A DNA stretch of 64,000 bases. It comes from Asterias rubens. Its lineage: Eukaryota. Both the position numbers and the translations under genes were made by a program. Shown piece after piece: positions 19,340 to 49,400 of the stretch. The DNA is taken from assembly GCF_902459465.1 (NCBI RefSeq), contig NC_047078.1, positions 10,850,001 through 10,914,000 of the forward strand, written 5' to 3'. How positions within the stretch are numbered: the first letter of the stretch is position 1; each line of letters opens with the position of its first letter. The notes beneath the pieces are model-generated. The model was not told where the DNA came from. It made no database searches and worked only from the letters and a program-made list of their open reading frames with translations.

Positions 19340-19672
19340 GTTCCCTCATGTAATTCCAATGGAAGAATTGGGAAACCTTGTAGTTGATGTTAGTTTCGGC
19401 ACTGCTGAACATAGCATTCCCACAACAAAAATGAAACACCAGAGAGATAGTGTGCTTACATCACTGTCTAAACATTTTGACAGTGCATTCATTAAATGCA
19501 TTAGATAAACATCAGCACATTTGCGACCATTGTCCCTGAGATCATCATTTATCAGTTAAATCCGATCGGACACAGGGCATGACCGACAATTGTGCATACA
19601 GCAGATGACCGTTATGTGCTTAAGGCAAAACAAAAAAAGATTTTCTCGGTAAAACATATAATACGTTTCTAA

Positions 19673-24768: not shown

Positions 24769-26059
24769 AAACGGTTATTAAATTAGTGATAATGATAAAA
24801 TAGTCACCTATAATGACGTAATATAATTATTTGATTTTTAAAATTCTAAAGTTTGCTAAAAATTTATCATAATGTTTTGATTTAAACGAAGCGTAAGAAA
24901 TTTAAAGAGCTGAAACTTAAAGAGCTGAAAACAAAACATAACTCCCCTTACAATGTGCAGTTTGGTTAGTAGCGTACACCGTTGCATTCATCTGTTAATC
25001 TAGATTAGATAATTACCACGCATTACCGTAAATTACATACACTTCTATAATCATAAGACTTCAAATTTGTATAATTAAGTCTCGTTTACTATTCATACGC
25101 ACTATTGTGTGATCTGTCGTAAGAGAACAACAGTGTGGGACTTTTTAAAACATAAACAAATATTTCAGAGACGATGAATAATTTTAAATATTTAATTTTC
25201 AGGCGTCTGAAACTGCTCATCTTTGTATGACAGGAAAGCCGGGTTAAATTATATATATATTTTTAACCAATGTAGTACCTTTTAAGGGAAATACAAAAGG
25301 CTTTGGGGCTCATTCTGCAGGTATTACTACGCTAAAAAAATCGGCACTTAAAAATGTACTAATTCTCAAACATGCGTAGGCCTATCAACTAGACGTACGG
25401 CTTCACCCATCCGAATGACCAAGCATTCAAACTACCTCCGGTTTGCACAGTCAAATAGGTCACACTTTGTGTTAGCGTTTGGTAATTAAATTGAAGACCT
25501 CTCTGATGACACAAGAGTGTCAAGACCAAGACCAAAACCCAGTCTCTTGAAACACAAGCACTTGGTCTGGCGCACTAATTGGTCACACCTCCTCTCAAAT
25601 CCCCCCCCCCCCAAAAAAAAGGGGAAAAAAAGATCGATAGTCGAGTCTTGTTTTAAAATTGAACTTCTCAATACAAAATCATGCGTGCATTCAGCAGAGG
25701 GTTGTTTCGACGCGCTGATACTTAACATAATACATCTCTTTAAGATTGTGATGAAAAGGCACACGAGCTCCTACTTAATAAGTTGGGGAAAGATATAAGG
25801 ATTAACAAGACTAAGACAAAAACAAGTCTAAACATATTCTCTAATAAAGGCGTGCTTTTTAAACATCATGAGCGTGTTTACAGGCAAATAACTGTACTTC
25901 ATTTATACAAATTTCATGCGAAAGTACGCCTAATTTCTACTTCTTGATATTTAGAACAAAATAATACATTTACAGTTCAACATCAATTTACAGTTCAACA
26001 ATCCAGTTTGAGTGTTACCCGGAAATATTGCCCATGGTACAAAAGGCTAACATGTGCCT

Positions 26060-26195
26060 TTACATGCATAATAGTAGCTCTCTCCAGAAGACGATCAGAG
26101 CATACTGATCGAAACGTCGAGTTAACCAATGGTTCTTTTCAGAACCACCCCAACTCATTTGAGTCATTACATGGTGTTACCGCAAATCTTTCCAT
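26060..26195 (+). mobile_element. Penelope-type terminal repeat fragment with a minimal hammerhead-like motif
   Basis: ctc-CAGAAGA-c-gatcag-agcata-ctgatc-GAAA-cgtc-gag (26082-26121), followed by ggttcttttcagaacc. Decayed reverse copy at about 1838-1885. Confidence 0.55.
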
Positions 26196-28642
26196 ACAGT
26201 AAAATATGGTTAAATTTCACTACAATTCTTGTCAACACTAGTATTATTATTTATTTATTTGACCTCAACAAATACCAGTACATTAAAAAAGCCCAGTAAA
26301 ATATGATTACATTTCACTACAATTCTAGTCAGCACTTGTATGCACACACCAAAGCTGAGTTTCAAAATGCAGCCAAATTAACGAAAGCCTAAATCTACAT
26401 GAAACAAATCAATTAACACAACATTAAAACACCGTTTCACGATTAAATATTGTTTTAAAACAAACACACTTAGGTTGGAGTATTCCTATAACACTGATAT
26501 AACTTGTAAGTGTTTTAAGACTATAATTCCCATAACAAGGTAGAAACTTTCTAAGCGGTATTTTCTGCTTTAACAGCTTAATGAAATTGGTCATGGTAGT
26601 TAGAGCCAAAATAAACAATCCATCTACAACTTCAATTAATTATCAGAAATCTCATTCTGTAACCACCACCCCCCCCCCCCCCCCAGGACGACAATTTTAG
26701 TGGGGAAAAAATGATTCTGATCCGCAGCTCGTTCGGGGTAAAACTTCCTCTAGCTGTTTTATTTTTGAAAACCTATCCGAATGATTGATAAACTCTGAAG
26801 AAAATACAATGCTTGACTCATGAGCAACAAGGTTTATTCTTCAATCTCCGGTTTGCAAGGTCAAATGAGGTCGCACTTTGTGTAGCGTTTGGTTAATATT
26901 TTAAGACCTTTCTTGACTATTGATATGTAGATATTAATTCTGGTTTTTACCCATACACCGTTGTGTGTTAGCACTGTATACTCAGTACTTTCTCGAGTCC
27001 TGTGAAAAAAAGGACTCAGCACTCGGGAAAGTACTGAGTATACAACACACATCGGAGTATGGGTAAAAAAACAAAATTAATATTCTTTATCCCCGATGCA
27101 AATTTAACATCTCTTTTCAGTTTTGAACAAAAGCAAACATGAAATCGTGTCACATTTCGTGTACCGTTTGTTTGGGTTTTGAAGACTTTACCGATGATGT
27201 TGATGTACACATTTGTTTAAAACAATGTATGACTTAAGGAGTTGGACATTTTTCAAAGATGAAAATTCAACTTCGGTAAAGTTAGTTTAAAATATAATCA
27301 AGATTACCATCTTGAACCATGTCCCAAATCCCAATAACTGTTGAAAGTAGACCATTTTCCTCAGCGGTTTATCAACAATATCCCTTCCAATTTGGACTTT
27401 CTGAAGTGCCGTTTCTGCTTTAGAAAGTAGAAACTTCTTTACATCTTCAAATTGGTTTGGAGATGATGCATCGTTGTGCGCTGCAGCTTGCAGGCCCGCT
27501 TTTTAGATATGGCTTGAGGCCTTTACCTAACCCCATCTTCTTATACACTTGATACCAGTGAGTGGATATACTAACACGACCTTTTGTATACATTCAAATT
27601 GTATTGGCATATTACTGTGTAACTTTAAATTTTGTTAAGACTACACTAATCTTTTACAAAACAAGATACTTGTGATACACACCACTTCAACCATTTACCA
27701 CAGAGTACTGAACAGCCATTGCTCAACACCGCTACAAGAGTGCCTCCATTTTGTTTGTAGTCAAAGATCATTCTCTTACATTAATGTTTATTGTTGGATC
27801 ATTCTGTTCCATTTCTTTGGAATGAACTTCTTTGTGTATTCACAAGGCTAGTTCTTTACACTGTTTTAAGTCTCTGAAAAAAACTCTTTTGTTTGAATCT
27901 GGTTTAAATTTTAAAGATGCTCACTAGTAATAACAATGTTCAATCATTGTATAATATACAATTACTTCATTTGTATACGCTTGGAGGCTTTTACATTAGG
28001 CGCTTTACATTATGCCTTTAATCATTATAAACATTTAAACAGTAAATACATAACAAACAATATTATTAGATGAGCAAATCGTGAGAACGGCACACACACG
28101 TGGCGTTAATGTGTTCAAAACGTAATTGGATGACAGAATGTCATGTGATTTAATTAGGTAAATTAATTCCGAACAACTAACATTCAAAACCATTACTGGA
28201 CTCGATGGTTAATTCTTTTTACAGCATCGGAATCCAATTGAGAAGAACATGCTATTCAAGAATTGTTTACTGTTTTCGAACAATCTTTGTTCTTATGGTG
28301 GTGTAGGCCTAATACTTCAATAGACATCTCAACGGAATTGACAGATTTTAAGTTTAATGTGTGATGTAATTATTCAACGGTCGTTAGTTTACTATACTAG
28401 CCTCAAGCTAAAATCACTGACCGCGAGCCCAGTGTTTATAATTTCGAGAGCTGCTGTCACACGTTTAGTGCTATTGTACATACTATCAATATTAAATGCG
28501 ATTAACACAATGAAACTGTTTAAAAAAAAAAACATGGGTATACTTATCCTAAACGGTCCGAGGGTCCGGTGTTCTCATGGGTGTGTCTCTATCTCCATTA
28601 GACTTACTCTTTTGATTGCGGCAGCAGCAGCAGCATACTCAC

Positions 28643-28760
28643 CGCTTGCACAAGCAGAATGCCACAACACCAACGATGATTAACACAACGATTATGGCGC
28701 CTATGACGATTCCAATGATAGCCCCGATTCCTAATGGGGGCCCCGATGGGGGTGTAACAT
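28643..28760 (-). CDS. Transmembrane exon B (orphan; alternative C-terminus or a separate small gene)
   Basis: DVTPPSGPPLGIGAIIGIVIGAIIVVLIIVGVVAFCLCKR; acceptor gtttatttgttttccttgttaacag, donor gtgagt, phase 1 to 2. Confidence 0.8.
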
Positions 28761-29009
28761 CTGTTAACAAGGAAAACAAATAAACACTTACATTTAAAGG
28801 CACGGTACACTATTGGTAATTACTCGAAGTAATTGTTAGCTGGGAAAACTTAACTGAATTGGCCGGGGAAAAACTTTATTAAGGTTTGTATCGGCTACCT
28901 TTGCATTCAATTTGTTTTCCCACCAAAAAGATGTTGTTCTTCCCACTGAGGTTCGTTTCATTATTGTGCCAGCTGAGCTAAATCAATTACAAGAACTATC
29001 TCTGCCATC

Positions 29010-29167
29010 ACAGGTATCCATTTACCACTGGGTGGAGAGAAGCATTTGCAGTTAAGTGTCTTTCTCATGGACACAAGTGTCACGACCGGGATTCAAACCC
29101 ACACTCTGCTGAACAGAAAAAAACAGAGCTTTGGTTCGACGCTCTTATCCGCTCGGCCACGACACCC
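29010..29167 (-). mobile_element. tRNA-derived SINE
   Basis: Reverse strand gggtgtcgtggccgagcggataagagc (A box) ... gtgggtttgaatcccggtcgtgacac (B box). Related copy at about 58700-58870 (+). Confidence 0.75.
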
Positions 29168-30838
29168 CACACCATTTTGTTCTAATTTATGTTGATGCTC
29201 TGCACTTACCCGATCCATCCTCAGCGTTGACGACGTAACATTTTGTTAGACAGGTCATTAAATTATTCACAAGCATGGTACACAACAAAATGTGGGCAAG
29301 ATTATTTTATAAAGTAAACTAAAACAACAAAACTATAAGTAAAACACCGTTTGAATGAGTAAGCGAAACGATTGTAGCTTTTTCCACTTTATTACACTTT
29401 TTCAAACCAACACAACGTCTAATATTGTGCATGCCAATCACACAGAATAACTAGGGCAAGATATCTAGTAAAATTAATGGCATTTATAAAGGCATCTGTC
29501 AATCTGTTATTTCAGATGCAGTCTGAGTAAAATTAAATATAATTAGATATCACTTCAACAAGACAAATCAAACAATATGAATGTTCAAGAAGGAAGAAGT
29601 TTTAAGTACAGAGTTTCAAGACAATGAACCATGAGTTGTTTTTATTGTTGGGGTTGCTGCTGTTGTTGTTCTTGGTGTTTTTTGCTGTTATTGTTGTTGT
29701 TTTGTGTTTGTTATTATTGTGTTGTTTATATTGTTTGTATTGCTGCCTCAAGCCACCCACTGCTCTAGAATTGTAAAGGTCGTGGGTTACCGAGTATACA
29801 GTGCTAACACGGTGTATATGGGTCAAAACCAAAATTAAGAACCTTTATCCCTGATGGAAAATTAACAATTATATTGTTGCTGCTTCTGTTGTGATTAGTG
29901 CTGCTGTCACTGCTTCTAATTATTGTCATTTTGTGATGTTGTTTTAATGTCGTTGATCGTTGGTTGTTTTTAATAAGCATAAATTTGTTTTTTGAGATAA
30001 TCTACAATGTAACAGCTATCGTTAAACAGCGGCTATATCTGAAAAGCGCGACCACTATTTGAAATGACATTTTCACATGTTAGCTTTGATGCATACATCT
30101 AATTGTTATAGAAATTTAAACAATCGAACTGTTCAAACAAAATGTATACTTTGCTAAATAGTATAGTTTTTTACTCTAAGACCCGGCTAAGCAGCGCAAA
30201 CCTTGCTTACTGGATTAATGAAGTATGGCCCATTGTACAAATCTACATGCACCCTATACAAAAATATGTTGTGACTGTTTCCTATTGTGTATTCGTGGTA
30301 TACATCTTTGTGAGCAATACGTAAGCTACCTAAATTCACCAGAGTTATAAATATTGAACAAAAATCAACGCAATTTCTTTTCTTTTTTAAATAAACATTG
30401 TTTTTCTTATTTACAGCACTACATACTACCAAGCATAAACAATGCAGGCTACAGGACGGAACTTAACAAAATTTCGATTTAATTGAGTTTTGTGGGTACA
30501 CGTAGAAACAATTTAAAAAATAATCACTTTCAAAAAAATTATTTTAATTAGGAAGAGTGATTATTGGCAAGATATTTGAGTTGAAGCGTCTCTGACAAAC
30601 TTGAGTTTCTATAAAATAAAAAAAAGGGTCAAGTAAAATTCCTCTTTTGTTTTACATTAAATAAGTAAAGCTTCACGTCACCAGAAAAAAAAAATGAATT
30701 TGGCTAGTCACTCAAAGCTTAATCTGCATACTACAATTAATTGTCCTACATCGACATATTTACACGCCAAAAGCCATCGACACCAAAAACGTTACCACGA
30801 TTGGTGACTTCTTCTCCAGAGGTCATAAACTTTTTCCC

Positions 30839-31142
30839 GATCGGGAAGCGTATTTGTAACACTGCAGCACGGGGTTTTGCACTGTTAACTGTCAATACCT
30901 GTCTTGAGTAGGAGACTACGTTGCAACGCTTTTATGAAATTGTCCTTCAATTGGGCAGATGTGCATAACGGCGTTGTAAAAATGATATTGAATTCGGGCT
31001 TTCTTTCCCCTATTGAAATAATTCTCCAATAGAAGGGAACATGTACGTAACGGCGTTGTTAACAAAGTAGTCTCATCTCAAGACATGGTTTGGCAGTGTT
31101 CAGTACAAAACCCCTCGCTGTTGTAAAATAAGATATGCGATC
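30839..31142. mobile_element. MITE with imperfect terminal inverted repeats of about 80 bp
   Basis: ggggttttgcactg...tgtcttgagtaggagactac versus gtagtctcatctcaagaca...cagtacaaaacccc. Reverse partial copy at about 21010-21155. Confidence 0.75.
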
Positions 31143-31579
31143 GGGAATAAGGAAACATTTATTGGACGGACTGATAAAATCACTCTAACTATACACATTT
31201 TGATATATATTCATTACACTTACACAACCCGCTTGATACCTTTTTTTTTTCATGAAGTCACTAGGTCAACTTTATACACGCATCTGTGATGCAGTGCAAG
31301 GGCTTTTGCTGCTGCACTCCAAAACTCTGCAAGTAATGTTAACAAATAACCCTCATTTCATCCTTCAAGAACATTTTTGTTTTTTAAAATGAATTCCATA
31401 ATGAGGGCTTGCCTCTTTGCCAAACATGCTAAATTGTCATCCATGTAACAGTACTCAAAAGAAAAAAAAAGGATTATTCCTATGGACCTGTTGCAATTAC
31501 GTCTCCCGTTAGATTTGTATGCGCAGTGACCAGGATGGGCCATTAAATCAAGCTGTTTTTTACCACATGAGGGCGTCCT

Positions 31580-31700
31580 ACCCAAATGACGTCAAAGCAG
31601 GTCTTTAATGGGCTTCTTTTAAGTCGAGCAAGTTCGAACACGTGAAGTGGACGTGGTTTACGTCACACTTATCATGATCGAGTGACCAATCGGGTGCGTC
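31580..31700. promoter_or_regulatory. Promoter-like motif cluster (CRE, E-box, CCAAT)
   Basis: TGACGTCA 31587-31594, CACGTG 31639-31644, GACCAATCG with CCAAT at 31686-31690; locally CpG-rich. Confidence 0.4.
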
Positions 31701-31846
31701 TTTAGTGTCATGGTGCATTATTTAAAATTCTGTACAGTACTGTATACGTTATAAACACTACACATTTTGTCGTCCGCACACGTGTTACCGAGCACTCGGT
31801 TTAAATGTGCACACAAGTTACACACATTTATGAAAACTTTATTTTT

Positions 31847-32218
31847 CAAGGCACTGGACACGTTTTGCAATTGTCAAAGACCAGTGTTCCCACTGGGTGT
31901 TTCCCAACATAAAATAACAAATCTGTGCAAATGTTGACTTAATTGGTCATCGCAGTTGCAAGAGAAACATGAAAGAAAACCCCCTTTGCTGCACAAATTT
32001 GTGTGCTTTCAGATGCATAATAAAAGGCTTTAGCTGAAGTATTTTATTATTTGAGGGAGAAAATACCTTTTTCTAAAAAAAAAATTCTTTTAGATAGGGA
32101 GCAGTTTACTCACAATGTTTAATACTATCAACAGCTCTCTCTCCATTGCTCGTAACAAAGTAAGTTGTATTGCTAACGATTATTTTGAGTGATTACTAAT
32201 AGTGTCCAGTGCCTTTAA
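31847..32218. mobile_element. Family A MITE (diverged)
   Basis: aaggcactggacac...aattgtcaaagaccag ... tagtgtccagtgcctttaa. Confidence 0.85.
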
Positions 32219-34395
32219 ATGCACAAACAAGTAACACACATTTAAGAAAATCTTACTTTATAAACCACACGGGAACGAAACTAACTGGGCAAATTTTTAC
32301 TCCTAACTTAGGATTAATCTTAGATCTTTGGACGAGTTAAGTTCCGTATCCATGAATATCATAATGTTCTTCTTTGAATACTTCAAATATGAACAAAGTC
32401 ATGAAATAAAATCCACACAAGTGAAAATATTACACTCTAAAAAAAACGTTAATGTCGAAAAAATAACCCGGATTCAAAGTCCGAGAGGGGCTTATTCAAT
32501 TTGTGGTTTTAAAAACGGATTTTTAACTAGAAGAAAAATGAACATTACAGAACTGTTTTTTTTTTTTTGCTAACAAAACAGTTCACCATGTATGTACACA
32601 TAAACTGACAAACCTGTAAAAATTGGAGATCGATCAGCAATCTGGGTCACGAGAATAATAAAAAAAAGGATTACACATTCTTTGCATGACATCGAGAAAA
32701 AACGGGAAATTATTGGTATATTTCTTATCAAATATGACATTTCAGACAGACATATATCAATGGATGTTTTCTACTCTCATCATCATTAGACCATGTAAGT
32801 TGTATGTAAATATGTGATCTTAGACGAATTTTGTTCTTACCAACTCTGTAATGGTCCTCTAAGCGACAGTTTGACCCATTTATCGGTCATTTTGACACTG
32901 ATTCAGAGTCAGCTCACCCAGAAACAAGTCAGACCCCACGGGACCTGGAAACCGGGTCAGTTCTGACACGAGAGTGTTTAAAGTGTACTTGTTCTATGTA
33001 TACACGTTACCTTACAAACCTTTTAGGCCGAACGTATTATATAATATTTATTGACCAAACCAACAGCGGACGAGCCGCCAATTGCAGGAAAGGATACGCC
33101 AAAAAAACAATAAGAAATACTCATTTAGCCTATATAAAAACAATCTAATTAAAATAGAATCATCTTAGGAAAGAAAATTAAAGCATACATTGAAGATTAA
33201 AAAAAATAAAATAGGGAACAGAAACAGACCACCATGAACGACTGTGAAAATATATTTAAAATAAATTTTAAAAGCAAAAGCCTACATTAAATTATAAACA
33301 GAATAAACGATAAAAAGACAAGGAAAAAAAAAGGGGGAAGCATAAACTGTACAATAGTTTATACATGAATGAACTGTCTTCTAATGAATGTACAAATGTA
33401 ATGGGCTCAAACTGCTGACTAAGTTACACTCAAACAGCTTTGCAACAAGCCTGAGCAGAGTTAATTTGTAGTGCAGGATGAAATTTACACAAAAAAAACA
33501 CGGTTTTATTTTGCTCTTTTTAAAAAGCTGTCTTTAAAAAAAATTCTCTCGAGTTTCATTCGACCATCTACTTCAACGGTCAGTCTTGAGTCACATAATG
33601 ATCTTCCTGTGTATTTCTCTGCCCGTCAAGAACTTGCATTGAACCAGTACACCCATGTCTGCCGTTTAAAACAATTCAGTTCACTGTTTAACGACTGACT
33701 GGACACTATTTGACCAAGTAAAGTTCAAGCTCTTTTTAAGACAACTATCGATCAGCCGAAGACAACATTCTGATGTTAAAGAATTCTGGAAAAGAATAGA
33801 AAAAGTATGATAATAAATTTGTATTGTTGTTTTTTTATATTCACCTGAATGAATATAGGATTTTTTCAGACTAAAAACAATATTTTGTACAACTATTTAT
33901 GTTTTTTTTTTTTCTACATGGCACTATCAAACTATTACCAGTATGGGAACCCGATTGCGCCCTCAGTGTCCAAGGCAATGCAAAACAAAATGACTTAATC
34001 CACAATAATGGGAAATCTTATTCGGCCTTAAGAATACATGTATATTTAAAATTACCAACACAAGTAGTAAGTGTTGTCATTTGTTTATTTTCACAAAACA
34101 CGTAGGTAGTTGGTGTCATTGACATTGGACTCGATCTCTTTTCCTTGTTAGATTTAAGCAAGAGGGGGCGCCACACTCTTTGCTTCTGTCCATTTTGTAA
34201 CGAGCATGACTCTGGCCACCCTAAGAATGCTATGTATTTACTTGGGAAAAATTAAACTTGTGTTTATCTGGTCAAGAATGATACTCCTGAAGCTCTGTAC
34301 ATATCTTTAGTCAGGCAACTTCCCAAAGAGAATTTTTGAGTGCGCCCTCTTGGGTCTGGAATGATGTGAGTTCTTACTTGTGTGAAAGTGCAATT

Positions 34396-34487
34396 TTACA
34401 CATCTGCCACTCCAGCTGCTTTGTCATCTGCTTTGCCATTAACCTTTTTGTCCTTTCCTTTCTTGTTCTGGTCAGTTTCTGGTGATA
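34396..34487 (-). CDS. Terminal cytoplasmic exon
   Basis: VSPETDQNKKGKDKKVNGKADDKAAGVADV-stop; acceptor taccttgacag, in phase with TM exon A. Confidence 0.85.
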
Positions 34488-37400
34488 CTGTCAAGGTAAT
34501 ATAGAATACAAAATGATACATAAATGGAACAATTGTTACAGTTAAGGCGGTAAAGTTTTTATGCCAACAATTATTTGGAGTAATTATCAAAGTGTCCAGT
34601 GCTTTTAGTATGAATCTGTGGACATTTTGTTTTGTGTTGAACAAAAAGAACCTAAACCCTTTAAAAGCTGGGGCCACTATTGGTTATTACTCAAAACACT
34701 TATTAGCAAAAAACCTTACTTGGTAACGAGTAATGGGGAGAGGTTGGTAATATAAAACATTGTGAGAAACGGCTCCCTCTGAAGTGACGTAGTGAAACTG
34801 ATTGAAAATTTTTCAAGAAGAGTAATCTACAATAGACTGTCCATTTTCGGATCAATTAATTCATGTCAAAATCTCACTTCTACCAACAATATGGTATACT
34901 TTTCATGGTCAAAACAACTTTTATAGGCAGTATTGGTATTACTCAAATAGACACTATTGGTATTACTCAAATCGATTTTTAACATAAAAACTTACTTGGT
35001 TACAAGGAATGGAGAGCTGTTGATAGTATGAACCATTGTGAGAAACGGCTCCCTCTAAATATTAACGTAGTTTTCCAGAATGACAGTAACGTTCCGCGAA
35101 TTTGATTTCGAGACCTCAGATTTAGAATTTGAGGTCTCGAAGTCAATTATCTGAAAGCACACAACTTTGTGTGACAAGGGTGTTTTTTTCTTTCATTATT
35201 ATCTCGCAACTTGGACGACCAATTAAGCTCAAACTGCCACAGGTTTGTTATTTGATGCATATGTTGAGATGCACCAAGTGAGGAGACTAGTCGTTGACTT
35301 CAAAAGGTGTCCAGTGTCTTTAATGTCTACTTACCATTAGTCTTTTTGTGGTATCTACATGCAGCTACACACACGGCCAGTAATATCGCTAACAGAGCCA
35401 GACACCCGAACACAATGCCTATGATGATACCGACACTCAAACCTGTACCTATGGAAACAACCATTGAAAGGGGAAATTAGTTAATAGTTGGTGTTTTTTT
35501 TTTCTATCCCAGAGGGATTTTTTCTTTTCTTTTTTAGTTGCTACAAGGTGTTTCTATTGAATGTTATTTTAGTCACATGCAAAAAGTCATTTAGTTGAAA
35601 TTCACTTTCAATGAAAATTATGATGGACACTTCAAAATTACTGAACATTTTTCCAAAATGGTTTTGTTTGGACTTTTCCCCGCGAATTTTTTGTTTCTAA
35701 ACCAACATCCTTCATCGAAAGAAAATGGTTCCATCAAACTGTTCGGAAAATTGCTACGCCAAAAAAGTGAACAATTCAGAAGAGAAGTTGGATATTTTTT
35801 ATTTATCTTTTCTAGTGTCTTTTCCTTTAAAATGTCACCCAACCTCAAGACACAAATTTAGTTAAAAACAATTATAGTGCTACATTTTAAATGTTACAGA
35901 TAGCGAAGATGGATACATGTTTATACTGCAAAAATGTAACATATTGCAAAAGAGGAGCTGTAGGAAAGTGCCAAGTTTGAAAAATAATGCAAAATTTAAG
36001 AGTGAAATGTGAATGAATAACAATAAACAGCTGAAAATGGACCATGAAATGAAGACAAGAGTAAATTCCAGAAAATAAAGATTCTAAAAAGCATTGCAAT
36101 ACACAACAAAATATTAAGTGAAGTAATATTTTACAGAAGACAATAAGTTAAGCACAAAATCAACTGTTAAACAAACACTTTTCCCTCAACCAGGCGCAAA
36201 TAATTATAAATTATTTCAGCATGTATCTGTCCACGTGAATGCCCATTGAACATTAAAAGGCACAACCTTTCTTGCAGCCATATTAATTTTACCCTTGTCA
36301 AAATTTAACACATTTATAACACCGACCATCTTTGTACACGAGATAGATAGAAAGATGTTTATGTCGACCATCACATTTACAGAAACAAAATATTGCACAT
36401 CTTGCAAAATCTAGTAGAATTTATATGCAATAGAACACTTTGTTTTGACTACACGTGACTACACTCAAAACAACCACGGGAAAGATGGGCTTTTGACACA
36501 CAATCTTTTCACAACACTTTTATCTTTAAAGACAACGAAACTCATTAACAGAAAGCATCGTGCGTTAAGTACACAGAAGTCACCACTAACAACAACTCTG
36601 AGAAGGTTAATGTTACACAAAGAATGAATACGACAAATGGAACTATAGGCCCTATGTGAATTTGTTTTTAGTGTATTATGCATTTTTAGTGTATTAGTAG
36701 AAGGTGGTATTGGGTTTGATACAATGGTAGAACAAAGACCGATCCAAAATGCCATACCCAGTGGTACATGCTTCTTTAAAAGGAATCAATAGACTGCCTT
36801 AAATGTTGATACACGCAACAGCCGTCGACCCAGGGAAGGGATACTATCGAGACCTCATGTGCGATTGAACTACTCTAGGGCCACTACGCATGCGTCACTG
36901 ACACGCATCATGTACGCATGCGTACTGGACTTTTGTCCAATCACACAACCACAGCTATGATTGGTCGGGTTGGTTAATTGAATCCGTCTTCAATACTCTG
37001 GGGTTAGCAGCTAGTTAACATTACAAATGTTAGTGGTTAGTTGCGGCAAGTATGACGATATGAACATTTACAGGTGGTTTGAAATGATTATTAGCTGATG
37101 ATGTATTGTGATATTGGGAAAGATGGTTTTTGATTTTGGGTCACTAGTTACGAAAGCCTGTAAGTTATTTTTGTTTTCAAAGTTTCCATTTTAATTTTCA
37201 AGAGCAAATATTTTATTTTCAAGAGCAATTATTTTATTTTCAAGAGCAGTTATAGCAGCTGCTCTTGAAAATAACAAAAATATCTGCTCTTGAAAACCTT
37301 TTTTTGAGAACAAAAATGACTGGTTTTGCATATAAATTAGCAGTCAATAATCGGCTTTTGTAAGTCAAAATAAAACTTCAGTTCAAGTCAAATATTATGT

Positions 37401-40400: not shown

Positions 40401-43400
40401 TGTTCAGCTACTAATCTTTTTCAATAAAGTAAAAATGCAGTCAGTTTACCTGTTTAAAATGTCATATGGAATAAATTTATGTTTCAAGAATTGAGACATT
40501 TTTGTTTGTTGGCAGATAAAGCAGGCGGTTTGTGTAATATCGTTAAATGAAATGCAAATAACTATGAGATGTCTGCATCTAGACTCACATCAATCCTATT
40601 CAGCTGAAAGGAATGGTACGGTGTTCATATTAGTGAAGCTTATCTTTTATTATCAATATTATTTCTGTTAATGAAACCAATTAGGATGCCTCATAAGTAA
40701 ACTTAATCACTGTAGCCGATTTTTACAAAAAAATTAACTCAGGTTTTACTTTTAGAGGTTAAGGAAACATCAGCTCACAGGTTATTTTCCATAATCAGAA
40801 TGATGGTGATGGTGACCACACCAATAAGTTTTGCGTCCAAAACCATGGCATAATTTCATAGAGCTACTTTAGCAGCGAGAATTGCTTAACAATTTTCTGC
40901 TAAGCAGAAATGAGCCGGGCACCAGTCACTAATTGTACTCGTGACTTGGTAGTTTGGCTTGTAGCCTCATTCCGGTAAGAGTAATTTTGTTATGCTCAGC
41001 TACTTTGTGTGCTTAAGCAGCAAGCACTATTAAACTGGCCCCAGATAATTGTAAGGAAACATGCTGTCGTACCATTAATTTTGAACAAAAACAACGAAAT
41101 GCAAACATGTGAATTCTAAAAACTCCTGGGTCAGGCCCAGGTGAACTGACCCAATTCGGGTCAGGCTCACTGAATCGGGTTCAAACGGGATTCTAACTCG
41201 AATTCCAGTTAGTTTGACGCATTCCTGTGTCATTTTGACACTGATTCAAGGGTCATACTGACCCATAGGCCCACAGGACTCGAATCCAGGTCAAATTTGA
41301 CCCGGAAGTTTTTAGAGTGCTGGGACCAATTTCATAGAAAAGCTTTGCACACAATTTGCTTAAAAACACTGGACACTATTGGTAATTGTCAAAGACTAGT
41401 GTTCACAGTTGGTGTATCTCATAACATACATAACATAACAAACCTGTGAAAATTCGAGTTCAATCGGTCGTCGAAGTTGCGAGATATTAATGGGAAAAAA
41501 ACACTCTTGTGGCACCATGGTCACACGAAGTTGTGTGCCTTCAGATGCTTGATTTCAAGACCTCAAACTCTAAACTTGAGGTCTCGGAATCAAATTCGAT
41601 GAAAATTACTTCTTTCTCGAAAATTATGTCACTTCAGAGGGAGCTGTTTCTCAAAATGTTTCATAGTATCAACCTCTCCCCATTACTCGTAATCAAGTAA
41701 GGTTTTATGATTAAAAATTATTTTGAGTATAATTACCAATAGAATTGTCCACTGCCTTTGAATTGTCCACTGCCTTTAAGCACGAAAAAAATAGCTTGCT
41801 TATTATACATTTTACTGGCAAAAATTCCGTGCCATATACATGTACAATGCTTGTGACTGGTATTTAGTTGCTGCATAACAATTGAGTGGGGTCTTGGCAG
41901 GTAATCTGATTTTACTAAGCAAGGATGTTGTTTAGCTTAAAGCAAATTTTGTGCTCAAGCAGCTCTACGAAATTGGGCCCAGGCCTAAAGGCCTTCCCTG
42001 CTATATTAGAAAGTCTGAAATGTTTAAATGAGTCAATGACCATATTGTGAAATCTTTGGAAATTCTACTAGAAAAAAGGTGTTTTTGTGTGTAAACTGTT
42101 AATAGATGACAGGTAATTTACTCACCGAATTTCCCACGGTTTCCCTGGCAACCAATCTGTAAACACAAAATTTTTAAAAAGTGTTCAGGAAGCCACACAT
42201 GGAAACATTTGAATCAGGTTTTAGTAACTGTTTTGTAGTATTTGCATGATTTCCATTATGTTTATATTTAATATTATATTTATCCTCCCTATAAACACTG
42301 ATAATGATAGGCCTACAATAAATCCCTCGGTGCAAAATATAAAAACTAAACCAAGGAACTGTTGAAAAATATTCAAAACAACAAATTTGAATTCAAATTT
42401 CAAACTAAACCAAACGAGTCTCTTTGAAACATCATTGCCTGGTGTATGTTTCCCGTCATCAAACAATCTAGACTACTTTAAGAGAAATGCCAACTCATAC
42501 CTTCAGCTCGCGTTATTTATTGATATGTCTTTATTCTTGTAGCCCCTAACCATAAGTGTTTTTTTAGCCTTGTTTGGTTGGGGTAAACTTCCTTTTTGAA
42601 AAAAAAAATATTAAAAGCAGATGTGTATTGATCTGGTCTGCTGATAAAACTACCCAAAAGCCAACTGTGATTTCAAAAAAATAACTAACTAAATAAATAA
42701 CAGACATAATTAATTTTCAGATCTTGAGGCAACAAATACTCCTAATCAAACTAACAGTAACTTTGATAACGAAACTTTTTGCGTTGAATTAGCTCCGCTT
42801 GAAGGAAGTTTGCCGAAACTAGGACAAAATCTTGTTGTTGTTTTTTCGACCGAATGTTAAAATTAATAACGACTCTCAAAGACCACATTATGAAAACTTT
42901 CTATAAATTATTACCTTGTGACGCTAACTGATATGTTTAAAAAAAACACCATGAAGGCATTGAAATAATAATAATTGCGTGCTAAATATGCCTAAAATGG
43001 ACAGAAACACAAATAGCCCCACGATTATTGATGACAGAATCATATTTTAGAGAACATTCGTTATTTGTGGTTATATTTTATGATTTCAACGACAACTCAC
43101 CCCTTCTAAAGACCACCGGTTAAGAAGACTATGGTTGAAAACATCTTCTTAAACAAAAATTCTCCTTAGCTGTCTTGTCCAATAGCAACGCCAGATTGGG
43201 TCAATAATCCACGCTTAACTGCGTTTTGCGCACAGACCACGTGGCTCGAACAGAGTACCTTATTATTTTTACGCACATGATATTTTTTCAAATGGAGCAA
43301 CACTGGTTTGAGAGGCAATGCAACTTATGTTTACATGTTTGATAGCAACTTCTGTTTTTAAAATTTGAAGGACAAAATTACAATTCGAGTGCAACGGCTA

Positions 43401-46400
43401 CTCACGGCTGATCGATATTTTCAGAGATTAGTTATGGCATAATTGACACAATAATCGTTATAATATTCATAACATTTTATAAAAAACGTTAGTCCATGTT
43501 CGTGTATTGTCTACAATGAGGATCCGAAGATCATCTTCTTAAAGGTTAATTTTGAAATGGATAAGCAAGCTGTAAAAAACTGGATGCGTTTACGTCGGAA
43601 GCAAAATGTATTGAAATCAGGTATACCCGTAGCATGCTAAGCAAAACACTTTTTATGACATAAATCTGCTACTACGAATTGGTATAGCAAAGCGATGATA
43701 ATGTTAGTAGGGTCTGTGGTTGAATTTATGGAGTTGATGACACCAGAGCTTTATTTCACAAAAAGTTAAGGTTGATCTTTACCGATTACCCATTTTTAAA
43801 ATTAAAGCTTAAATGCATGATTTCGACGCAGGGCCAATTTTTATGACACATTGCTTACCCAAGAATTCTGCAGATCCATATAATTATATACAAAGCATGT
43901 GGATTTATGGGCCGATAGCCCAGAATTCTGCGGTAACAAGTGGCATGAAACTGGGGCCAGATTTTGCCACAAATTGAATGTGATAACAAGTTCGTACATG
44001 TATGACGCAATGAGTTTGGTTTTGGATGAGTGTTTTGTCCAGACAGGCAATGATGACAAAAACAAGAAAATGAATAAATTGATAGAGAAAACATATAAAT
44101 ACGAACACAACCAATGTGAAATGACAAATCAATATAGTGCCCCCCCCCCCCCCTATCTAAAGATAGTCTCTGACTGGTTGGTGAAAGTTTAGTATACGCG
44201 CGCGTTTCCAATGTTTGCCATAGACCTTTTCGCAAATACCGGGGCGCGCGCGTAAAGCTTGGAATTAGGTGCATTGTGGTCTAGCTGGTATCCAAATTTG
44301 ATCCATATATATCCCACAATGCACCTCATTCAACAGTCTGCGCTTGCGCATTGGTATTTGCGATAAGGTCTATTAGCCTTTTTGAGATATGGTGGACACG
44401 AAGATGTGCACTGCTTAGTTTGGATGTATATGTATACAGACAAATTGACTAAACCTATGTCATAGTTGTCCACCAATACCTCAAAATGGCATATGGCGGC
44501 AAAGGGTGTACATTAACAATAAGCTGTAATGTATAACAGGTCAACATTATGACACACCCGAGCAAAGTAGCTTAGATAACGAAGATGACACCCAGCAGAT
44601 ACAACATATGTAACTAATTTATCACTAAATATGATGATAAAAGTTTGTAGATCATTTTTGAACCAGGAAGTGATGATACAGCATTCTAACCATTGTTCCA
44701 TAAAAAAAAAATCAGATAAATCACAGGATTGTTCAAAATGGGTCCAAAATCCTTGTAATTGTTACTAAGGAACTCGTGACTCACCATCTGGTTCCTGTTT
44801 GGGGGCATATGGGAAACAAACACATTTCCTCTGATGGGGAAGTACGGTCTGACTTGAAAGAATTATCAAAACCACAAATTCCCCATATGCTCAAAATTTT
44901 GTCCAGGCCTGTTGAAAATTCATTAAGTTGAAGTTTGCTACGAGGAAGTCAGTCAAGATTATGTAAGGACTGAATACAAACAAATAACGACAGAAGATCC
45001 CAAATTAAGATCCCACATTAAACAGAGTGGTGTTACTTGCAAGCACTGAACTGAACAAAATAAGATTCAAAGCAAAATAAGATATGTATTACGTAATGCG
45101 AGGTAGCTATGACGATTGAAACAACATGATCCCTTTCACCATAGCAAACCACAGTTAACTGTACCATTGGTTTTCAAACCAACATTTTTAGTTTACTTGC
45201 GTCATTATGAAATGTCAAGCCGTTAGTGGGTAGGGCCTTGGTATTATCCACAATTCCTGCCGTTGCGACGTGAGATCTGGAATAGGACCCTTACATGACG
45301 TGACACAATCATACAGCGCCCTCACAAGGGCACACAAAGGTTGGACGGTTGTTGGTGCGTTAACACGTGCGCAGGACCTCAGAGGGTAGCACAAAGAACA
45401 TCTATCGTCCAATGATGTCCTTCATTTGACCCCAGTGAGGGCCCTTTTTTACCACAGTGAGGGCGCTTTTTGAGCAGGTGACGTCACGTGCAAGGGGTCT
45501 ATTGAGCATTTGTTTAAACAAACTCTTTCAGTAACCATCAACATACAACCAAAGCGAAGACATTAATGCGTGCAGTAATCGAAGAAGGCGTGCCCAACAA
45601 CAAAAAGCAAAAGGCTTCAGAAGTTTTGGCCATGGCCTGTTTCAGTAAAAGCAACCACTTGACCATCTTTAAGAAGTACCTGCGTCACAAAGTAACGTGC
45701 ACCCCGTTGTTGTTTCAGGCGTGGTGGCAGTGGTGGGTGGGGTTATATGTGTACTATTGGTCATTTCAGTTGGATCAGTGGTCATTTCAGTTGGATCGGT
45801 GGTCATTTCAGTTGAACCCATTTGGGTTGTAGTTTTATTCATTGAACCAGGGACAGTATTAGTTGTAGTCGATGGTTCTGTGGAACTGAAATCAGACGTT
45901 GTTTCCGTAGGACCAGAGGGGGACATTGTGGTTTCTTGTGATGTTGTGAAAGTTGGGGCTGTAGTGTCTTGTGGTGTCGTGGTAGTGGTATTGTCTGTGG
46001 AAGTAAGATCTAAACAATAAGTTCAACCTTTAACCCAAACCAAAATATCCACGGGTTTTTCAACTGTGACAGAAAACTCAAAGATGTTAACATCATAAAT
46101 TGGAAATAAAAAGAAACAAAATTTAACAAATCATTATAAAGAACAACTGAATGAATACATGACAATTAGTCAAAACAAAATCAGCTTTGTGGGTGATCAG
46201 TTCCGTCAGTGGTTAATGTCATCACCTGTTTCACATAATTCGTGATCGGAAGGAAACATACAAGAAACTTATCACTGAAGTAGCTCAACAGTCAAAAATG
46301 CGTCAACTTGTTTGGCAGTTGTGCATTATTAAGCTTTAAAACCTTTAACTTAGCGCTGGTAACACTATAAGTCACAGTGCAATGTCCTTAGGGAGTCAAA

Positions 46401-49400
46401 GTCATTGATATCCTAGAATGGACTAATCCACATACACAGAAGGGGTTTGAGTTCCTTTGTACTTTCAAAGCAAGTGGCTGACACTCAAATACTTATAAAC
46501 CTGACCAGAGCAGTTTCATAGAGCAGTGTTGGTAGAATTTGTTAATTAAAAATTAAGTTAAAAATGTAAACCTTTTTAAACACAAAATTAGAATTTAAAA
46601 TTATACACAATGTACATGGATGGTTACAAGTGGCCATCAAAGCAAATAGCTTGTATTACTTAAAGTTACGAGAACAAAGTAATATAACGTGGTCTTTAAA
46701 ACGCACAAAAACTCGAGTTGAGGCTATAGCCAGAACTGACCCAGTACCCAGGTCCCAGGTACCTGACCCATTTCTGGGTCAGGCTGACCTGGAAACTGGT
46801 TTAAAAAAAAAAGGGAAATCAAATTCGTTAGTTTGACAAACTGCTGGGTCATTTTGACACAGATTCTGGAGGTTTTGACAATCCTTTTTTTTTTTACGTT
46901 GACCTTACTAGAGTTTTCTAGGCATATTTCCATAAAGCTGTTAAGCAAAAAAATACTCTACTCTAAAAAGCGTATCCTTTTGCCAGTACAGGCAACAACC
47001 ACCATCACCATGGTAACTATGACGCAGTAACTATATGGTACATGTACACAATGAATGAACATGTACATGTATGTTTATGCTGATTGGTCATTTCTCGAGC
47101 TATACTCCGCCATCTAATGCGAACCACTCGAAACTCAGGTGATGTCTTAGAAGAGTTTTTGAGAAAACCTTAAGTCACTGAACCAGAGACTAAGTTACCA
47201 ATTGATGACAAGAATTGTAGAAATTCCTAATCAACATGGTGTTGAGAAAGTTGTGAACGTTCTCTCCGCGGAGCTGTGTACAGATTATGCCTGCATGAAT
47301 GCCATTAGGGTCGTGGTTCTTTTGTAACCATGATTACAAGGTTGCCCCGATGCTGTACAAAGGTTTTGACAAATGAATATTTAGCTCCTTGATACATGTA
47401 TACAAGAGATGGCTGGTGTAGCTCGTGAGAGATCCATAATCAAGATACACTTTTAATAAATGATTGTAGATAAATTAATTTTGGTTTTACCCATGTACAT
47501 TGTACACCGATGTGTTTATCCCCGATGCAAACTAATCATTCGAACTGCCACTAGCTATACCGGGCCATCTCGGTGGTCTAGTGGGTATTGCAAGAGTCTT
47601 GGGTTCGAAACCCACCTGAGTAATATGCCTCAGATTTTTGTTATCACAGAGCGCAGGAAAGTACTGAGTAAACATGCAACAGTGCTCACAAACACCCGGG
47701 CCTACATGCTTCGTGTTTTAATATGGGCAATAAGGGCACCAGGGCATTTTCTCATTGGTAAGGGTCACCCTAAGAGGAAATAGTAAATTTCTACTGTTTA
47801 CTTTTTTTTTTAGCATTTCAAGGGCATAAAGGCAATGACCAGGGGCATGGGGGCAATTGCCTTCGTTGCCTACGCGAAGAATCAGGCCTGTGATGTATAC
47901 GGGTAAAACCAAAATTAATCCCTGATGCGAATTTCTATCTACAATTATCATAGATAGCTGTGAAACAAATGATGGGGTGCATGCATGCGTTGTCTGGACT
48001 TGCGTTGATTACTCTCGTGATAATGAGCGACTGGAAGCACTGCATGTTAAATCTGGTTATTTTATATTTACCTGTAGTGCCTTGTGGTTTTGGTGTAGTT
48101 GTTGGTTCCTCTGTAGTTGTGATAGCTGTTTTATGTCATGCAATTTACAAATACAATTGGTTAGTTGTTATATGGCGTTACTCTCTTCACTAATAACACA
48201 GGGTTTGTTTAGAACAATGTTACACGACTAACCCATAATATATCATCACATTCAAAGTATCAATGTTAACAAAAGGAATCCATTGGAATTCATATGCCAG
48301 ACCCTCACTTTGCAAAGGAAAAAAAGAGTAGGCCCCTACATGTACCTAGAGAAAACAAAAGTCAACAGCCATTTTTCCTCAATTAAGAAACAAAAAATAC
48401 ATTCATGCGAGTTAAGAGAACTGCCAAACTCATGTGATGTAACATAGAGCAAGTCTGTTTCTATAGCCCTATAGGCTGATCATGGGAGGCGGCTGGGCTC
48501 GATTTCACCAAGCAACAAAACTCATCATAGGAACAAATTGTCAGTATTTGCCAATTACCATAGTGATTTGTATTGTGACATCACACATTACTTAGCAACT
48601 ACGATTGATTTGTAGTTAGGATCAATCTTAGCTCTTTGTGAAATCTCGTCCCCAGGTCTAATGTAATTATAGACTTCATTTGAGTTTTATTTTAATGTTT
48701 ATATAGATGTACGTGTAGCAGTCGTTATACATCAACGTGTCTCGTGTACAGATTGGCCATGTAGGGGAAAAAACAAGTTTCTTTATTCATTCATTTGGTT
48801 CCCTATTGAACTCTACTCCTGAATATGCCATTATGTGTAGATCAACACTAAAATGCGAAAAGACAATCAATGGCTGAATTGGTTAGCAAAGAGATATACT
48901 AAATAAAATACATGTATTGACGGGGAGCTGTTAAACTACAGTTTAGAAGCCGTTATTGTGTCCAAATGCATGGATGAAACTTCAAAGAAAACTCTTCATG
49001 TCGAAACTCTATCAAGGAATACAGGTCTTACAGGCCTGATACAGGATAGGGATATTTTTCAAGGGGGCACTGGGAGGAAAATGCCCCCATTTTCCCGATC
49101 GGCATGCCTTGGTGCCCCTTGAAATTGTCACATAAAAATGTTTGGTGCCCTTCTTGCCATTTCAAAATGAAGCAACAGCGACAGACAATGCTAAAATTAC
49201 AAAATGTATGCTGGAATATCAAGGATGCAAGCAATGTCTGCTTGCCAGGTAATTGTATTTTTATATTCAAATATTGTTTAAAGAAAATATCATCATGAAC
49301 ACTATAACTGTACAGGTCAGAACTTAAATCAAAACAGCATACAATCTCACATGTTACTTTAATTACTATGTTTAACAGCGTTAGAAGACCATGTCCCATA

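What the first reader, a model, noticed from the sequence alone, without database searches (positions are those of the whole stretch)
28643..35448. Two separate transmembrane modules downstream of one Ig-EGF-mucin ectodomain
Seen: TM exon A (35448-35335) plus a terminal exon ending VADV-stop; then, 5.6 kb past that stop on the same strand, TM exon B (28760-28643) with strong splice sites. Both start in phase 1, so either can accept the stalk exons. B ends in phase 2 and has a second donor 35 nt downstream. Model 1: mutually exclusive TM and tail modules, comparable to the alternative TM exons of Dscam, giving one ectodomain two signalling or sorting outputs. Model 2: a separate microprotein gene using exon 29318-29210 (accATG at 29276, in-frame upstream stop, donor gtaagt), giving MLVNNLMTCLTKCYVVNAEDGSDVTPP-TM-CLCKR..., about 70 aa with no signal peptide. 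Either would be missed by the ORF track.
Basis: partly seen in the sequence, partly recalled or inferred. Interest (0 to 1): 0.7.

Follow-up and report, generated by a model that had tools for sequence, protein, structure and literature searches.

The report
Second membrane-anchor exon, used as last exon
A sea-star mucin-like surface-protein gene has a second, related membrane-anchor exon 5.6 kb past its normal stop; RNA assemblies show it is spliced and begins a long final exon, but which upstream exons feed it was not seen directly, so this is probably an ordinary alternative ending.

Summary
Exon A (35448-35335) and the VADV-stop exon are exactly the C-terminus of an NCBI Asterias rubens protein, P0001 (150 aa, 'integumentary mucin A.1-like'). 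Exon B (28760-28643) is unique in the genome. Its hydrophobic stretch is the second strongest in all six frames of the window, and it resembles TM A beyond composition.

In RNA-like assemblies, a contig at depth 203 starts at 28761, one base from the AG. It runs collinear through both B donors for 1.19 kb. The intron just upstream has depth 10.7. So the B acceptor is used, the donors are not used in that run, and B opens a long terminal exon. In the TM frame the protein ends CLCKR-TGA; the stop lies inside the GTGAGT.

Model 2 (microprotein) is refuted: its first exon has no coverage where B is abundant, and no such protein is on record. The Dscam-type cassette reading also fails. The best reading is an alternative last exon giving a near tail-less anchor.

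The upstream partner was not seen directly. Contig-end logic implies at least two partners, one ending like the small mucin exon (48072). No database protein contains B, so a non-coding relic exon remains a serious rival. The scan noted alternative anchor exons elsewhere in this genome.

The parts
35335..35448 (-). TM exon A (114 nt, phase 1 to 1)
   Evidence: Sequence. It matches residues GTGLSV...YHKKTN of NCBI protein P0001 exactly. It is unique in the genome.
34378..34487 (-). Last coding exon of the A module. It ends VADV-TAA (34398-34396). A candidate donor caa|gtaaga follows 18 nt after the stop, at 34378.
   Evidence: Use of the 34378 donor is inferred only, from the spliced contig that enters at 33785.
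29384..33785 (-). Transcribed 4.4-kb non-coding exon. Its acceptor (ttttccag|AATTC) is exactly at 33785 and AATAAA sits at 29393-29388.
   Evidence: X4 record 30 and X1 record 8 both begin their collinear part at 33785, with 332 and 31 foreign letters upstream. Depth is about 0-7 in 33850-34049. X4 record 26 ends at 29384. Sequence.
28643..28760 (-). It encodes (D)VTPPSGPPLG, a 29-residue hydrophobic stretch, then CLCKR.
   Evidence: The acceptor is used: X4 contig record 24 starts at 28761 at depth 203, while the intron contig record 25 has depth 10.7.
27570..28760 (-). Terminal exon that B opens. It is at least 1.19 kb and collinear with the genome through both B donors.
   Evidence: X4 record 24 is 1192 nt; letters 1-712 lie on 28761-28050 and the rest runs below 28050, with 1 mismatch. 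The relative (organism D) also has contigs on 28050-28562. AATAAA is at 27792. The true 3' end was not determined.
28639..28641 (-). TGA stop of the TM frame, inside the GTGAGT 'donor'. One X1 contig carries an allele without this stop.
   Evidence: table 4: in X1, 28644 is left out and a base is put in behind 28639 (depth 160 of 589). My reading of that allele is a tail that continues GVVCCCCCRNQKSK... to a TAG about 30 codons on (one search shows the reference frame after the TGA).
28606..28607 (-). GT of the second candidate donor (aaaaga|gtaagt). Not used in X4.
   Evidence: Contig record 24 is unbroken across it.
29210..29318 (-). Model-2 first exon (ATG at 29276). Present in sequence, not supported as an exon.
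   Evidence: X4's depth of 25.1 in bin 29250-29449 is fully accounted for by record 26, which covers 29384-29449. X1 record 1 is collinear over 29141-29429 at depth 33.
45680..45994 (-). Mucin stalk exon (phase 1 to 1). It contains the start Met of the NCBI model.
48072..48126 (-). Small mucin exon (AITTTEEPTTTPKPQGTT, phase 1 to 1). It ends ...CTACAG, the only exon end in this gene that reproduces the first contig merge at B.
   Evidence: Inference, not a seen junction.
61158..61275 (-). EGF exon (phase 1 to 1)
   Evidence: Pfam EGF 26.8 bits against a cut-off of 21.5.
62602..62943 (-). Ig C2-set exon (phase 1 to 1)
   Evidence: Pfam C2-set_2 E = 2.7e-10.
63952..64000 (-). 3' end of a further, V-like Ig exon that runs off the window (to about 64330)
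   Evidence: No Pfam hit. The Ig reading rests on the ...DDGSDYECQV motif, from my knowledge.
42126..42156 (-). It ends in phase 2 and is absent from the NCBI protein.

Best explanation
Exon B is a real, spliced exon. It acts as an alternative LAST exon, not a cassette, downstream of the mucin-like type I membrane-protein gene.

Transcripts that pass the gene's usual 3' end (the VADV-stop exon) can splice from an upstream phase-1 donor to the acceptor at 28760. They then continue unspliced for more than 1.1 kb. Read in frame, this replaces TM A plus its 30-residue lysine-rich tail with a related TM helix and a five-residue tail (CLCKR-stop). One likely form also drops the long mucin stalk. The result would be a near tail-less anchored form of the same ectodomain.

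B most likely arose by duplication of the TM exon.

Shown here:
- The sequence features.
- B's uniqueness in the genome.
- The kinship of TM A and TM B at peptide level.
- Acceptor use, and donor non-use in run X4.
- Absence of the model-2 exon from the RNA.

Inferred:
- Which upstream exons join B.
- That the B frame is translated.
For: - Acceptor use. X4 contig record 24 (depth 203) begins at 28761 and the overlapping intron contig record 25 has depth 10.7. In X1 depth rises from 33 upstream (29141-29429) to roughly 390-590 over B and downstream; that figure is my estimate from table 4 and the depth bins, and the contig boundary is not shown for X1. These are two different studies.
- A simulated 31-mer graph reproduces the observed pair of contig ends (28735 and 28761) only if B has at least two spliced upstream contexts. 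One must end xACAG, and the 48072 mucin exon is the only exon of this gene that does. The other must end [not A]G; TM A, the V-like Ig exon and the mini-exon all do.
- The 34378 post-stop donor would give a contig start at 28760, which was not observed.
- Every ectodomain exon is phase 1 to 1 and B starts in phase 1.
- TM B resembles TM A: score 57 against 28 +/- 5.5, 0 of 2000 shuffles. It is the second most hydrophobic stretch in the window.
- The contig is unbroken through both B donors for 1.19 kb.
- The relative, organism D, also transcribes the region downstream of B.
Against: - No junction into B was seen as letters; the partner rests on contig-end logic in one run.
- No protein containing B exists among 1.84 billion representatives or among proteins of 34-108 aa.
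- The stalk search (58-184 aa) returned only P0001. It has one cluster member and no isoform label, so NCBI has no stalk+B or TM A+B isoform.
- B's conservation in the ~4% diverged relative could not be shown: no contig at 92% likeness or better covers 28563-28649 there.
- X4 record 30 carries 332 unbranched letters upstream of 33785. If these are stalk + TM A + the VADV exon, none of those three donors feeds B in that run.
It is not on record.
Confidence: 0.5

Rival explanations
1. B is a decayed duplicate of the TM exon that is still spliced but no longer translated. It sits in a long 3' UTR variant or a non-coding RNA from this locus, and its TM-like frame is a relic.
For: - No protein with B is in any collection searched.
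- The TM frame hits TGA right after CLCKR, and one population allele differs at exactly this point.
- The locus already makes a 4.4-kb non-coding exon from 33785.
- B's DNA shows no similarity to exon A.
- Two of B's three frames are open.
Against: - The hydrophobic stretch is intact over 29 residues with a textbook basic stop-transfer, and ranks second in the window.
- The phase matches all ectodomain donors.
- The obvious UTR donor (34378) does not fit the contig start at 28761.
- B is 3-5 times more abundant than the neighbouring non-coding exon.
Confidence: 0.3
2. B belongs to a different transcription unit from the NCBI mucin gene. One version is a larger Ig-Ig-EGF gene whose last intron contains the 150-aa mucin gene. 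Another is a unit with its own promoter above 34049. On this reading the two TM modules serve two genes, not one ectodomain.
For: - The NCBI model P0001 begins inside the stalk exon and carries no isoform label.
- No protein of 102-324 aa holding the Ig exon is on record for this species.
- The xACAG merge fits the small mucin exon upstream of the stalk.
Against: - All exons from the V-like Ig exon to TM A form one unbroken phase-1 chain.
- P0001 lacks a signal peptide, which suggests a 5'-truncated model rather than a separate gene.
- No second promoter or first exon was found.
Confidence: 0.12
3. One reading: Dscam-exon-17-like mutually exclusive TM cassettes that share downstream exons.
For: Two related TM exons lie on one strand with the same start phase.
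Against: - The end phases differ: exon A ends in phase 1, exon B in phase 2.
- A's own terminal exon and stop lie between the two.
- B's donors are not used in X4, and no convincing downstream exon was found by scan.
Confidence: 0.03
4. One reading: an independent microprotein gene of about 62-70 aa, made of exon 29318-29210 plus B.
For: The sequence has accATG, an upstream in-frame stop and a strong donor (score 11.3). The exon end ...TCGG fits the one-base merge.
Against: - X4 has zero coverage of 29094-29383 while B is at depth 203. X1 has a collinear low-depth contig across both exon borders.
- There is no protein hit.
Confidence: 0.02

Closest known systems
Alternative last exons that swap the membrane anchor or cytoplasmic tail of a cell-surface protein (for example NCAM 120/140/180, membrane versus secreted IgM, CD46 tail isoforms; from my knowledge)
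   Same: One ectodomain has a choice between 3' modules, made by splicing past a proximal stop and poly(A) site to a distal terminal exon. The distal form has a minimal tail.
   Different: Here both modules carry their own, related TM helix. The distal form may also drop the mucin stalk. The join to the ectodomain is inferred, not seen.
Drosophila Dscam1 exon 17.1/17.2 alternative TM exons (PMC1397879 lists exon 17 among the mutually exclusive arrays)
   Same: Two homologous TM-encoding exons lie in tandem on one gene.
   Different: The Dscam exons are adjacent cassettes with equal phases and common downstream exons. Here the phases differ, a complete terminal exon lies between the two, and B ends the message.
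Small mucin-like type I proteins (glycophorin or podoplanin type)
   Same: P0001 consists of a Thr/Pro-rich stalk, one TM helix and a short basic tail. Its Pfam hits to Glycophorin_A and Podoplanin are weak and below threshold.
   Different: There is no significant family membership. Upstream in-frame Ig, Ig and EGF exons suggest a larger protein.
Alternative anchor exons noted elsewhere in this genome by this scan (syntaxin-1, s1-178629; eight-copy TM exon array, s1-150165)
   Same: Tandem TM-anchor exons in the same sea-star genome.
   Different: Different genes. Those are adjacent exon arrays. I did not check them.

Membership tests
Mutually exclusive TM cassette exons (Dscam exon 17 type) | The tandem exons are homologous | tested here: met
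   Peptide score 57 against shuffles 28 +/- 5.5, 0 of 2000. DNA similarity is not significant (17% of shuffles reach the observed score).
Mutually exclusive TM cassette exons (Dscam exon 17 type) | Same start and end phase, so either exon fits the same flanking exons | tested here: not met
   A is 114 nt, phase 1 to 1. B is 118 nt, phase 1 to 2.
Mutually exclusive TM cassette exons (Dscam exon 17 type) | Both exons splice on to common downstream exons | tested here: not met
   A's terminal exon and stop lie between A and B. The X4 contig reads through both B donors for 1.19 kb. The scan found no convincing downstream exon.
Alternative last exon | Its own 3' splice site is used | tested here: met
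   A contig starts at 28761 with a 19-fold depth step in X4. Depth also rises in X1, from 33 to roughly 390-590 by my estimate. Simulation shows the contig ends need spliced contexts. This is inference from contig ends, not junction letters.
Alternative last exon | The exon is terminal: not spliced further, with its own poly(A) site | tested here: inconclusive
   It is unspliced for at least 1.19 kb in X4. AATAAA is at 27792, but the contig runs past it to about 27570. The 3' end was not found.
Alternative last exon | It shares upstream coding exons with the proximal isoform | tested here: inconclusive
   There is only k-mer boundary logic: the xACAG context fits the 48072 exon. No annotated isoform exists.
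Type I membrane anchor | A hydrophobic span of 20 or more residues followed by basic residues | tested here: met
   LGIGAIIGIVIGAIIVVLIIVGVVAFCLC followed by KR. The 21-residue Kyte-Doolittle mean is 3.35.
Independent microprotein gene (model 2) | The first exon is present in RNA at the level of the second | tested here: not met
   No coverage of 29094-29383 in X4. A low-depth collinear contig covers it in X1.
Independent microprotein gene (model 2) | The product or a homologue is on record | tested here: not met
   No hit at E <= 1 among proteins of 34-108 aa. No hit among 1.84 billion representatives.

The most novel reading that the evidence does not exclude
One Ig-Ig-EGF ectodomain is displayed in two forms. 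In the first it sits on a long mucin stalk, with TM A and a lysine-rich tail. In the second the stalk, TM A and the tail are skipped, and the ectodomain sits close to the membrane on a paralogous TM helix with a five-residue Cys-Lys-Arg tail. A segregating allele removes the TGA and adds a roughly 30-residue poly-Cys tail, so tail length of the second anchor would be polymorphic in the population.
Probability: 0.25. Interest if true: 0.5.

Novelty: new member of a known kind. Interest (0 to 1): 0.3.

Why it matters
If B is translated, one sea-star surface protein would switch between two forms by choice of 3' end. One form is tall, carries a tail and could signal. The other is short and almost tail-less. 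This is a known way of tuning adhesion receptors, but it is not annotated in this species: no protein containing B was found in any protein collection searched, the NCBI Asterias rubens set included. The locus is also a compact example of three serial alternative terminal exons. It further shows that the NCBI 150-aa model is probably truncated at its 5' end. If B is not translated, the locus shows how a duplicated exon can survive as a spliced non-coding exon.

Tried and rejected
- Protein search with the model-2 product: nothing.
- phmmer of the B peptide against 1.84 billion representatives: nothing. The self-match scores 65 bits, so by my estimate an exact copy would have been found.
- The look-up of encoding contigs for P0001, to read the public annotation around B: blocked for the window's own genome.
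- Ig-exon search, which sees only proteins of 102-324 aa: only a frameshifted 152-aa ORF (P0002) from an ENA metagenome contig. A full-length protein of about 480 aa could not be queried, because no stop-free reference is long enough and I did not type long sequences.
- Scan for an exon downstream of B in phase 2: no convincing candidate.
- Similarity of the frame after the TGA to A's tail: not significant, p = 0.14.
- Rfam on 26000-36000: nothing.
- ARAGORN on the interspersed repeat around 29020-29170: no tRNA.
- The 30-letter loose end in organism D at 28349: a repeat with about 2,250 copies, so a transposon insertion in the relative and not a splice.
- Attempt to identify the 332 letters upstream of 33785 in X4 from internal 30/31-mer repeats of the stalk exon: no exact repeats, so undecided.
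- The two 86%-identical Ig-exon paralogues on the same chromosome (about 10.24 and 10.48 Mb): they carry no TM A-like or B-like exon and tell nothing about the 3' modules.
- Donors inside 33785-28761 that could feed B: none sits at a contig break.
Full report
**Setting**

The window is C18:10,850,001-10,914,000 of a 417.6 Mb, 150-contig assembly. A protein encoded here is filed at NCBI under Asterias rubens, so this is the common sea star. All features discussed lie on the minus strand.

**Observation**

- Exon A is 35448-35335: 114 nt, phase 1 to 1.
- A's last coding exon starts at 34487 and ends VADV-TAA at 34398-34396.
- Exon B is 28760-28643: 118 nt, with a good polypyrimidine tract plus CAG, and donor GTGAGT. 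It starts in phase 1 and ends in phase 2.
- A second donor follows 35 nt on, giving an exon end at 28608.
- The candidate exon 29318-29210 has accATG, an upstream in-frame TAA and donor gtaagt.

B encodes (D)VTPPSGPPLG, then a 29-residue hydrophobic run, then CLCKR.

If the first donor is not used, the frame reads CGG TGA, so the stop sits inside the GTGAGT.

**Is B more than chance?**

- Among all stop-free segments in six frames of the 64 kb, B's best 21-residue Kyte-Doolittle mean (3.35) ranks second and TM A's (3.17) ranks fourth. Ranks 1 and 3 are the antisense of a simple repeat.
- The two TM peptides align with score 57 against 28 +/- 5.5 for shuffles of B, and 0 of 2000 shuffles reach it. 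They share order, not only composition. The DNA no longer shows similarity.
- B is single-copy. Only the 45-65 nt upstream of it belong to a repeat found all over the genome. No paralogue of the B peptide exists. TM A and its tail are also unique.

**The upstream gene**

- A search with the stalk exon returned one protein, P0001: 150 aa, NCBI 'integumentary mucin A.1-like [Asterias rubens]'. Its sequence starts at a Met inside the stalk exon (45994-45680), then runs through exon A and the VADV exon exactly. This confirms the A module and the junctions 45680-35448 and 35335-34487. It also shows the 31-nt exon 42156-42126 is not part of that model; that exon ends in phase 2 and would break the frame anyway.
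- Upstream there are further exons: a small mucin exon (48126-48072), an EGF exon (61275-61158; Pfam EGF), an Ig C2-set exon (62943-62602; Pfam C2-set_2, E = 2.7e-10), and a V-like Ig exon that runs off the window.
- All of these are phase 1 to 1. It is not confirmed by any protein I could retrieve. The Ig search sees only proteins of 102-324 aa and found nothing from this species.
- P0001 has no signal peptide, which suggests a model truncated at the 5' end.

**RNA evidence (one call, four runs, Logan contigs, laid on 28050-34049)**

The runs are not on record as RNA. I treat them as RNA for four reasons:
- Their contig sets total 57-171 Mb against a 417.6 Mb genome.
- Depth varies from about 0-7 (33850-34049) to hundreds within a few hundred bases.
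- Two contig borders fall exactly on minus-strand AG acceptors.
- One contig joins 33785 to 332 letters that lie elsewhere.

Findings from the laid contigs:

(a) The B acceptor is used, and in X4 the donors are not.
- X4 record 24 (1192 nt, depth 203, 1 mismatch) begins at 28761. It runs collinear through exon B, both donors and on below 28050, to about 27570.
- The overlapping intron contig, record 25 (28735-29093), has depth 10.7.
- In X1, depth is 33 at 29141-29429. It is roughly 390-590 over B and downstream; this is my estimate from table 4 and the depth bins, and the contig border is not shown for X1.
- A border at the AG, with a depth step of about 12- to 19-fold in two studies, means the B acceptor is used. 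An unbroken contig through the donors means they are not used in X4.
- B is therefore the head of a terminal exon of at least 1.19 kb. In the TM frame the product ends ...VAFCLCKR.

(b) Model 2 fails.
- X4's depth in bin 29250-29449 (25.1) is exactly what record 26 contributes over 29384-29449. Nothing else covers the model-2 exon.
- X1 has only a collinear depth-33 contig across both of its borders.

(c) There is a third terminal exon.
- Contigs in X1 and X4 start their collinear part exactly at 33785 (ttttccag|AATTC). They carry 31 and 332 foreign letters upstream.
- Depth in 33850-34049 is about 0-7.
- X4 record 26 runs unbroken from 31881 to 29384 and ends just after the AATAAA at 29393.
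- So a 4.4-kb non-coding exon with its own poly(A) signal lies between the A module and B.

(d) A polymorphism at the stop.
- One X1 contig (depth 160 of 589) lacks base 28644 and has an extra base behind 28639.
- On the minus strand this removes the TGA and keeps the frame. By my reading the tail then continues GVVCCCCCRNQKSK... to a TAG about 30 codons on (reference frame).

(e) The relative, organism D.
- X17 and X18 come from an organism about 4% diverged. Their contigs lie on 28050-28562 and on the 33785 exon.
- None at 92% likeness or better lies on 28563-28649, so B's conservation is undecided.
- Its loose end at 28349 is a repeat with about 2,250 copies, so it is a transposon insertion and not a splice.

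**Which exon feeds B?**

No junction letters were shown, so I used the contig ends.
- In a 31-mer graph the unspliced path and a spliced path merge at the first base they share.
- I simulated unitigs for the unspliced sequence plus candidate donor-to-B joins.
- The observed pair is: intron contig ending at 28735, exon contig starting at 28761. It is reproduced only when two kinds of partner are present.
- One partner must end xACAG with x not A. Of all exons of this gene, only the 48072 mucin exon (...CTACAG) does.
- The other partner must end [not A]G. TM A (...AATG), the V-like Ig exon (...ATTG), the mini-exon (...TTCG) and the rejected 29210 exon all do.
- Stalk-to-B alone (...GCAG) predicts 28734/28763. 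The post-stop donor 34378 (...ACAA) predicts a start at 28760. Neither matches on its own, although a stalk-to-B join could exist alongside the others.
- This is indirect, comes from one run, and depends on the assembler keeping exact unitig ends. Other neighbouring contigs in the same output overlap by 28-30 nt, as expected for k = 31.
- Taken at face value, B receives at least two donors. The likeliest coding form is Ig-Ig-EGF-small mucin exon-B, skipping the long stalk, TM A and its tail.

**Counter-evidence**

- No protein containing B exists among 1.84 billion cluster representatives. The self-match scores 65 bits, so by my estimate an exact copy would have been found.
- None exists among proteins of 34-108 aa either.
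- The stalk search (58-184 aa) would have shown a stalk+B or a TM A+B isoform, and it returned only P0001.
- If the 332 unbranched letters upstream of 33785 in X4 are stalk + TM A + the VADV exon (108 + 114 + 110 nt), then none of those three donors feeds B in that run. I could not verify what those letters are.
- B could therefore be a spliced but untranslated relic.

**Comparison with known systems**

- The Dscam exon-17 analogy fails on two defining points: equal phases and shared downstream exons.
- The anatomy is that of serial alternative last exons: the VADV exon, the 33785 exon and the B exon. This is a common way for surface proteins to change anchor or tail.
- Less usual is that the distal exon carries its own paralogous TM helix and almost no tail.
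- The scan has noted tandem anchor exons in other genes of this genome. I did not test those notes.

**Verdict**

- Observation: confirmed.
- Model 2: refuted.
- Model 1: kept only in the altered form 'alternative last exon with a second TM anchor', at about even odds. A non-coding relic exon is the main rival.
- Novelty: a new member of a known kind.
- Interest: modest.

Noticed in passing
window 29384-33785 (-): A 4.4-kb transcribed, ORF-poor exon. Its splice acceptor is exactly at 33785 and AATAAA sits at 29393. It is joined in RNA contigs to sequence lying above 34049, probably as an alternative 3' UTR exon of the mucin gene via the post-stop donor at 34378.
   Followed up: partly
window 28639-28644 (-): A segregating allele in run X1 (depth 160 of 589): one base lost at 28644 and one gained behind 28639. 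It removes the TGA after CLCKR and weakens the GTGAGT donor while keeping the frame.
   Followed up: partly
window 63952-64000 and L016:1-348 (-): A further V-like Ig exon of the same phase-1 chain crosses the window end. The public 150-aa model (P0001) therefore probably lacks its 5' half and signal peptide.
   Followed up: partly
G000:C18:10243558-10243896 (+) and C18:10483810-10484148 (-): Two copies of the Ig C2-set exon, 86% identical to this one and lying in inverted orientation about 240 kb apart. Each has a V-like Ig exon and a degenerate EGF-like exon next to it but no TM A-like or B-like exon. They are possibly partial or decaying duplicates.
   Followed up: partly
window 16584-19345 (-): The next gene downstream is a major-facilitator transporter (Pfam MFS_1, E = 6e-13 on the 292-aa exon). 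Its first coding exon carries a run of PVE(V/L)(S/P)-type repeats.
   Followed up: partly
window 33036-33335 and 28395-28484: Organism D, about 4% diverged, lacks about 300 nt at the first site and about 90 nt at the second. It also carries a high-copy repeat insertion at 28349/28350. These are indels in the transcribed non-coding parts.
   Followed up: partly
window 29020-29170 and 28785-28830 (-): Interspersed repeats lie just upstream of exon B. The first has a tRNA-like look but ARAGORN calls nothing. The second is the tail of a family with many genomic copies and ends about 25 nt before B's polypyrimidine tract.
   Followed up: partly
window 42126-42156 (-): A 31-nt candidate mini-exon with good splice sites (donor score 9.7) but a phase-2 end. 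It is absent from the NCBI protein. If joined to 33785 it would give a stop after three codons, which would be a secreted form. This is untested.
   Followed up: no
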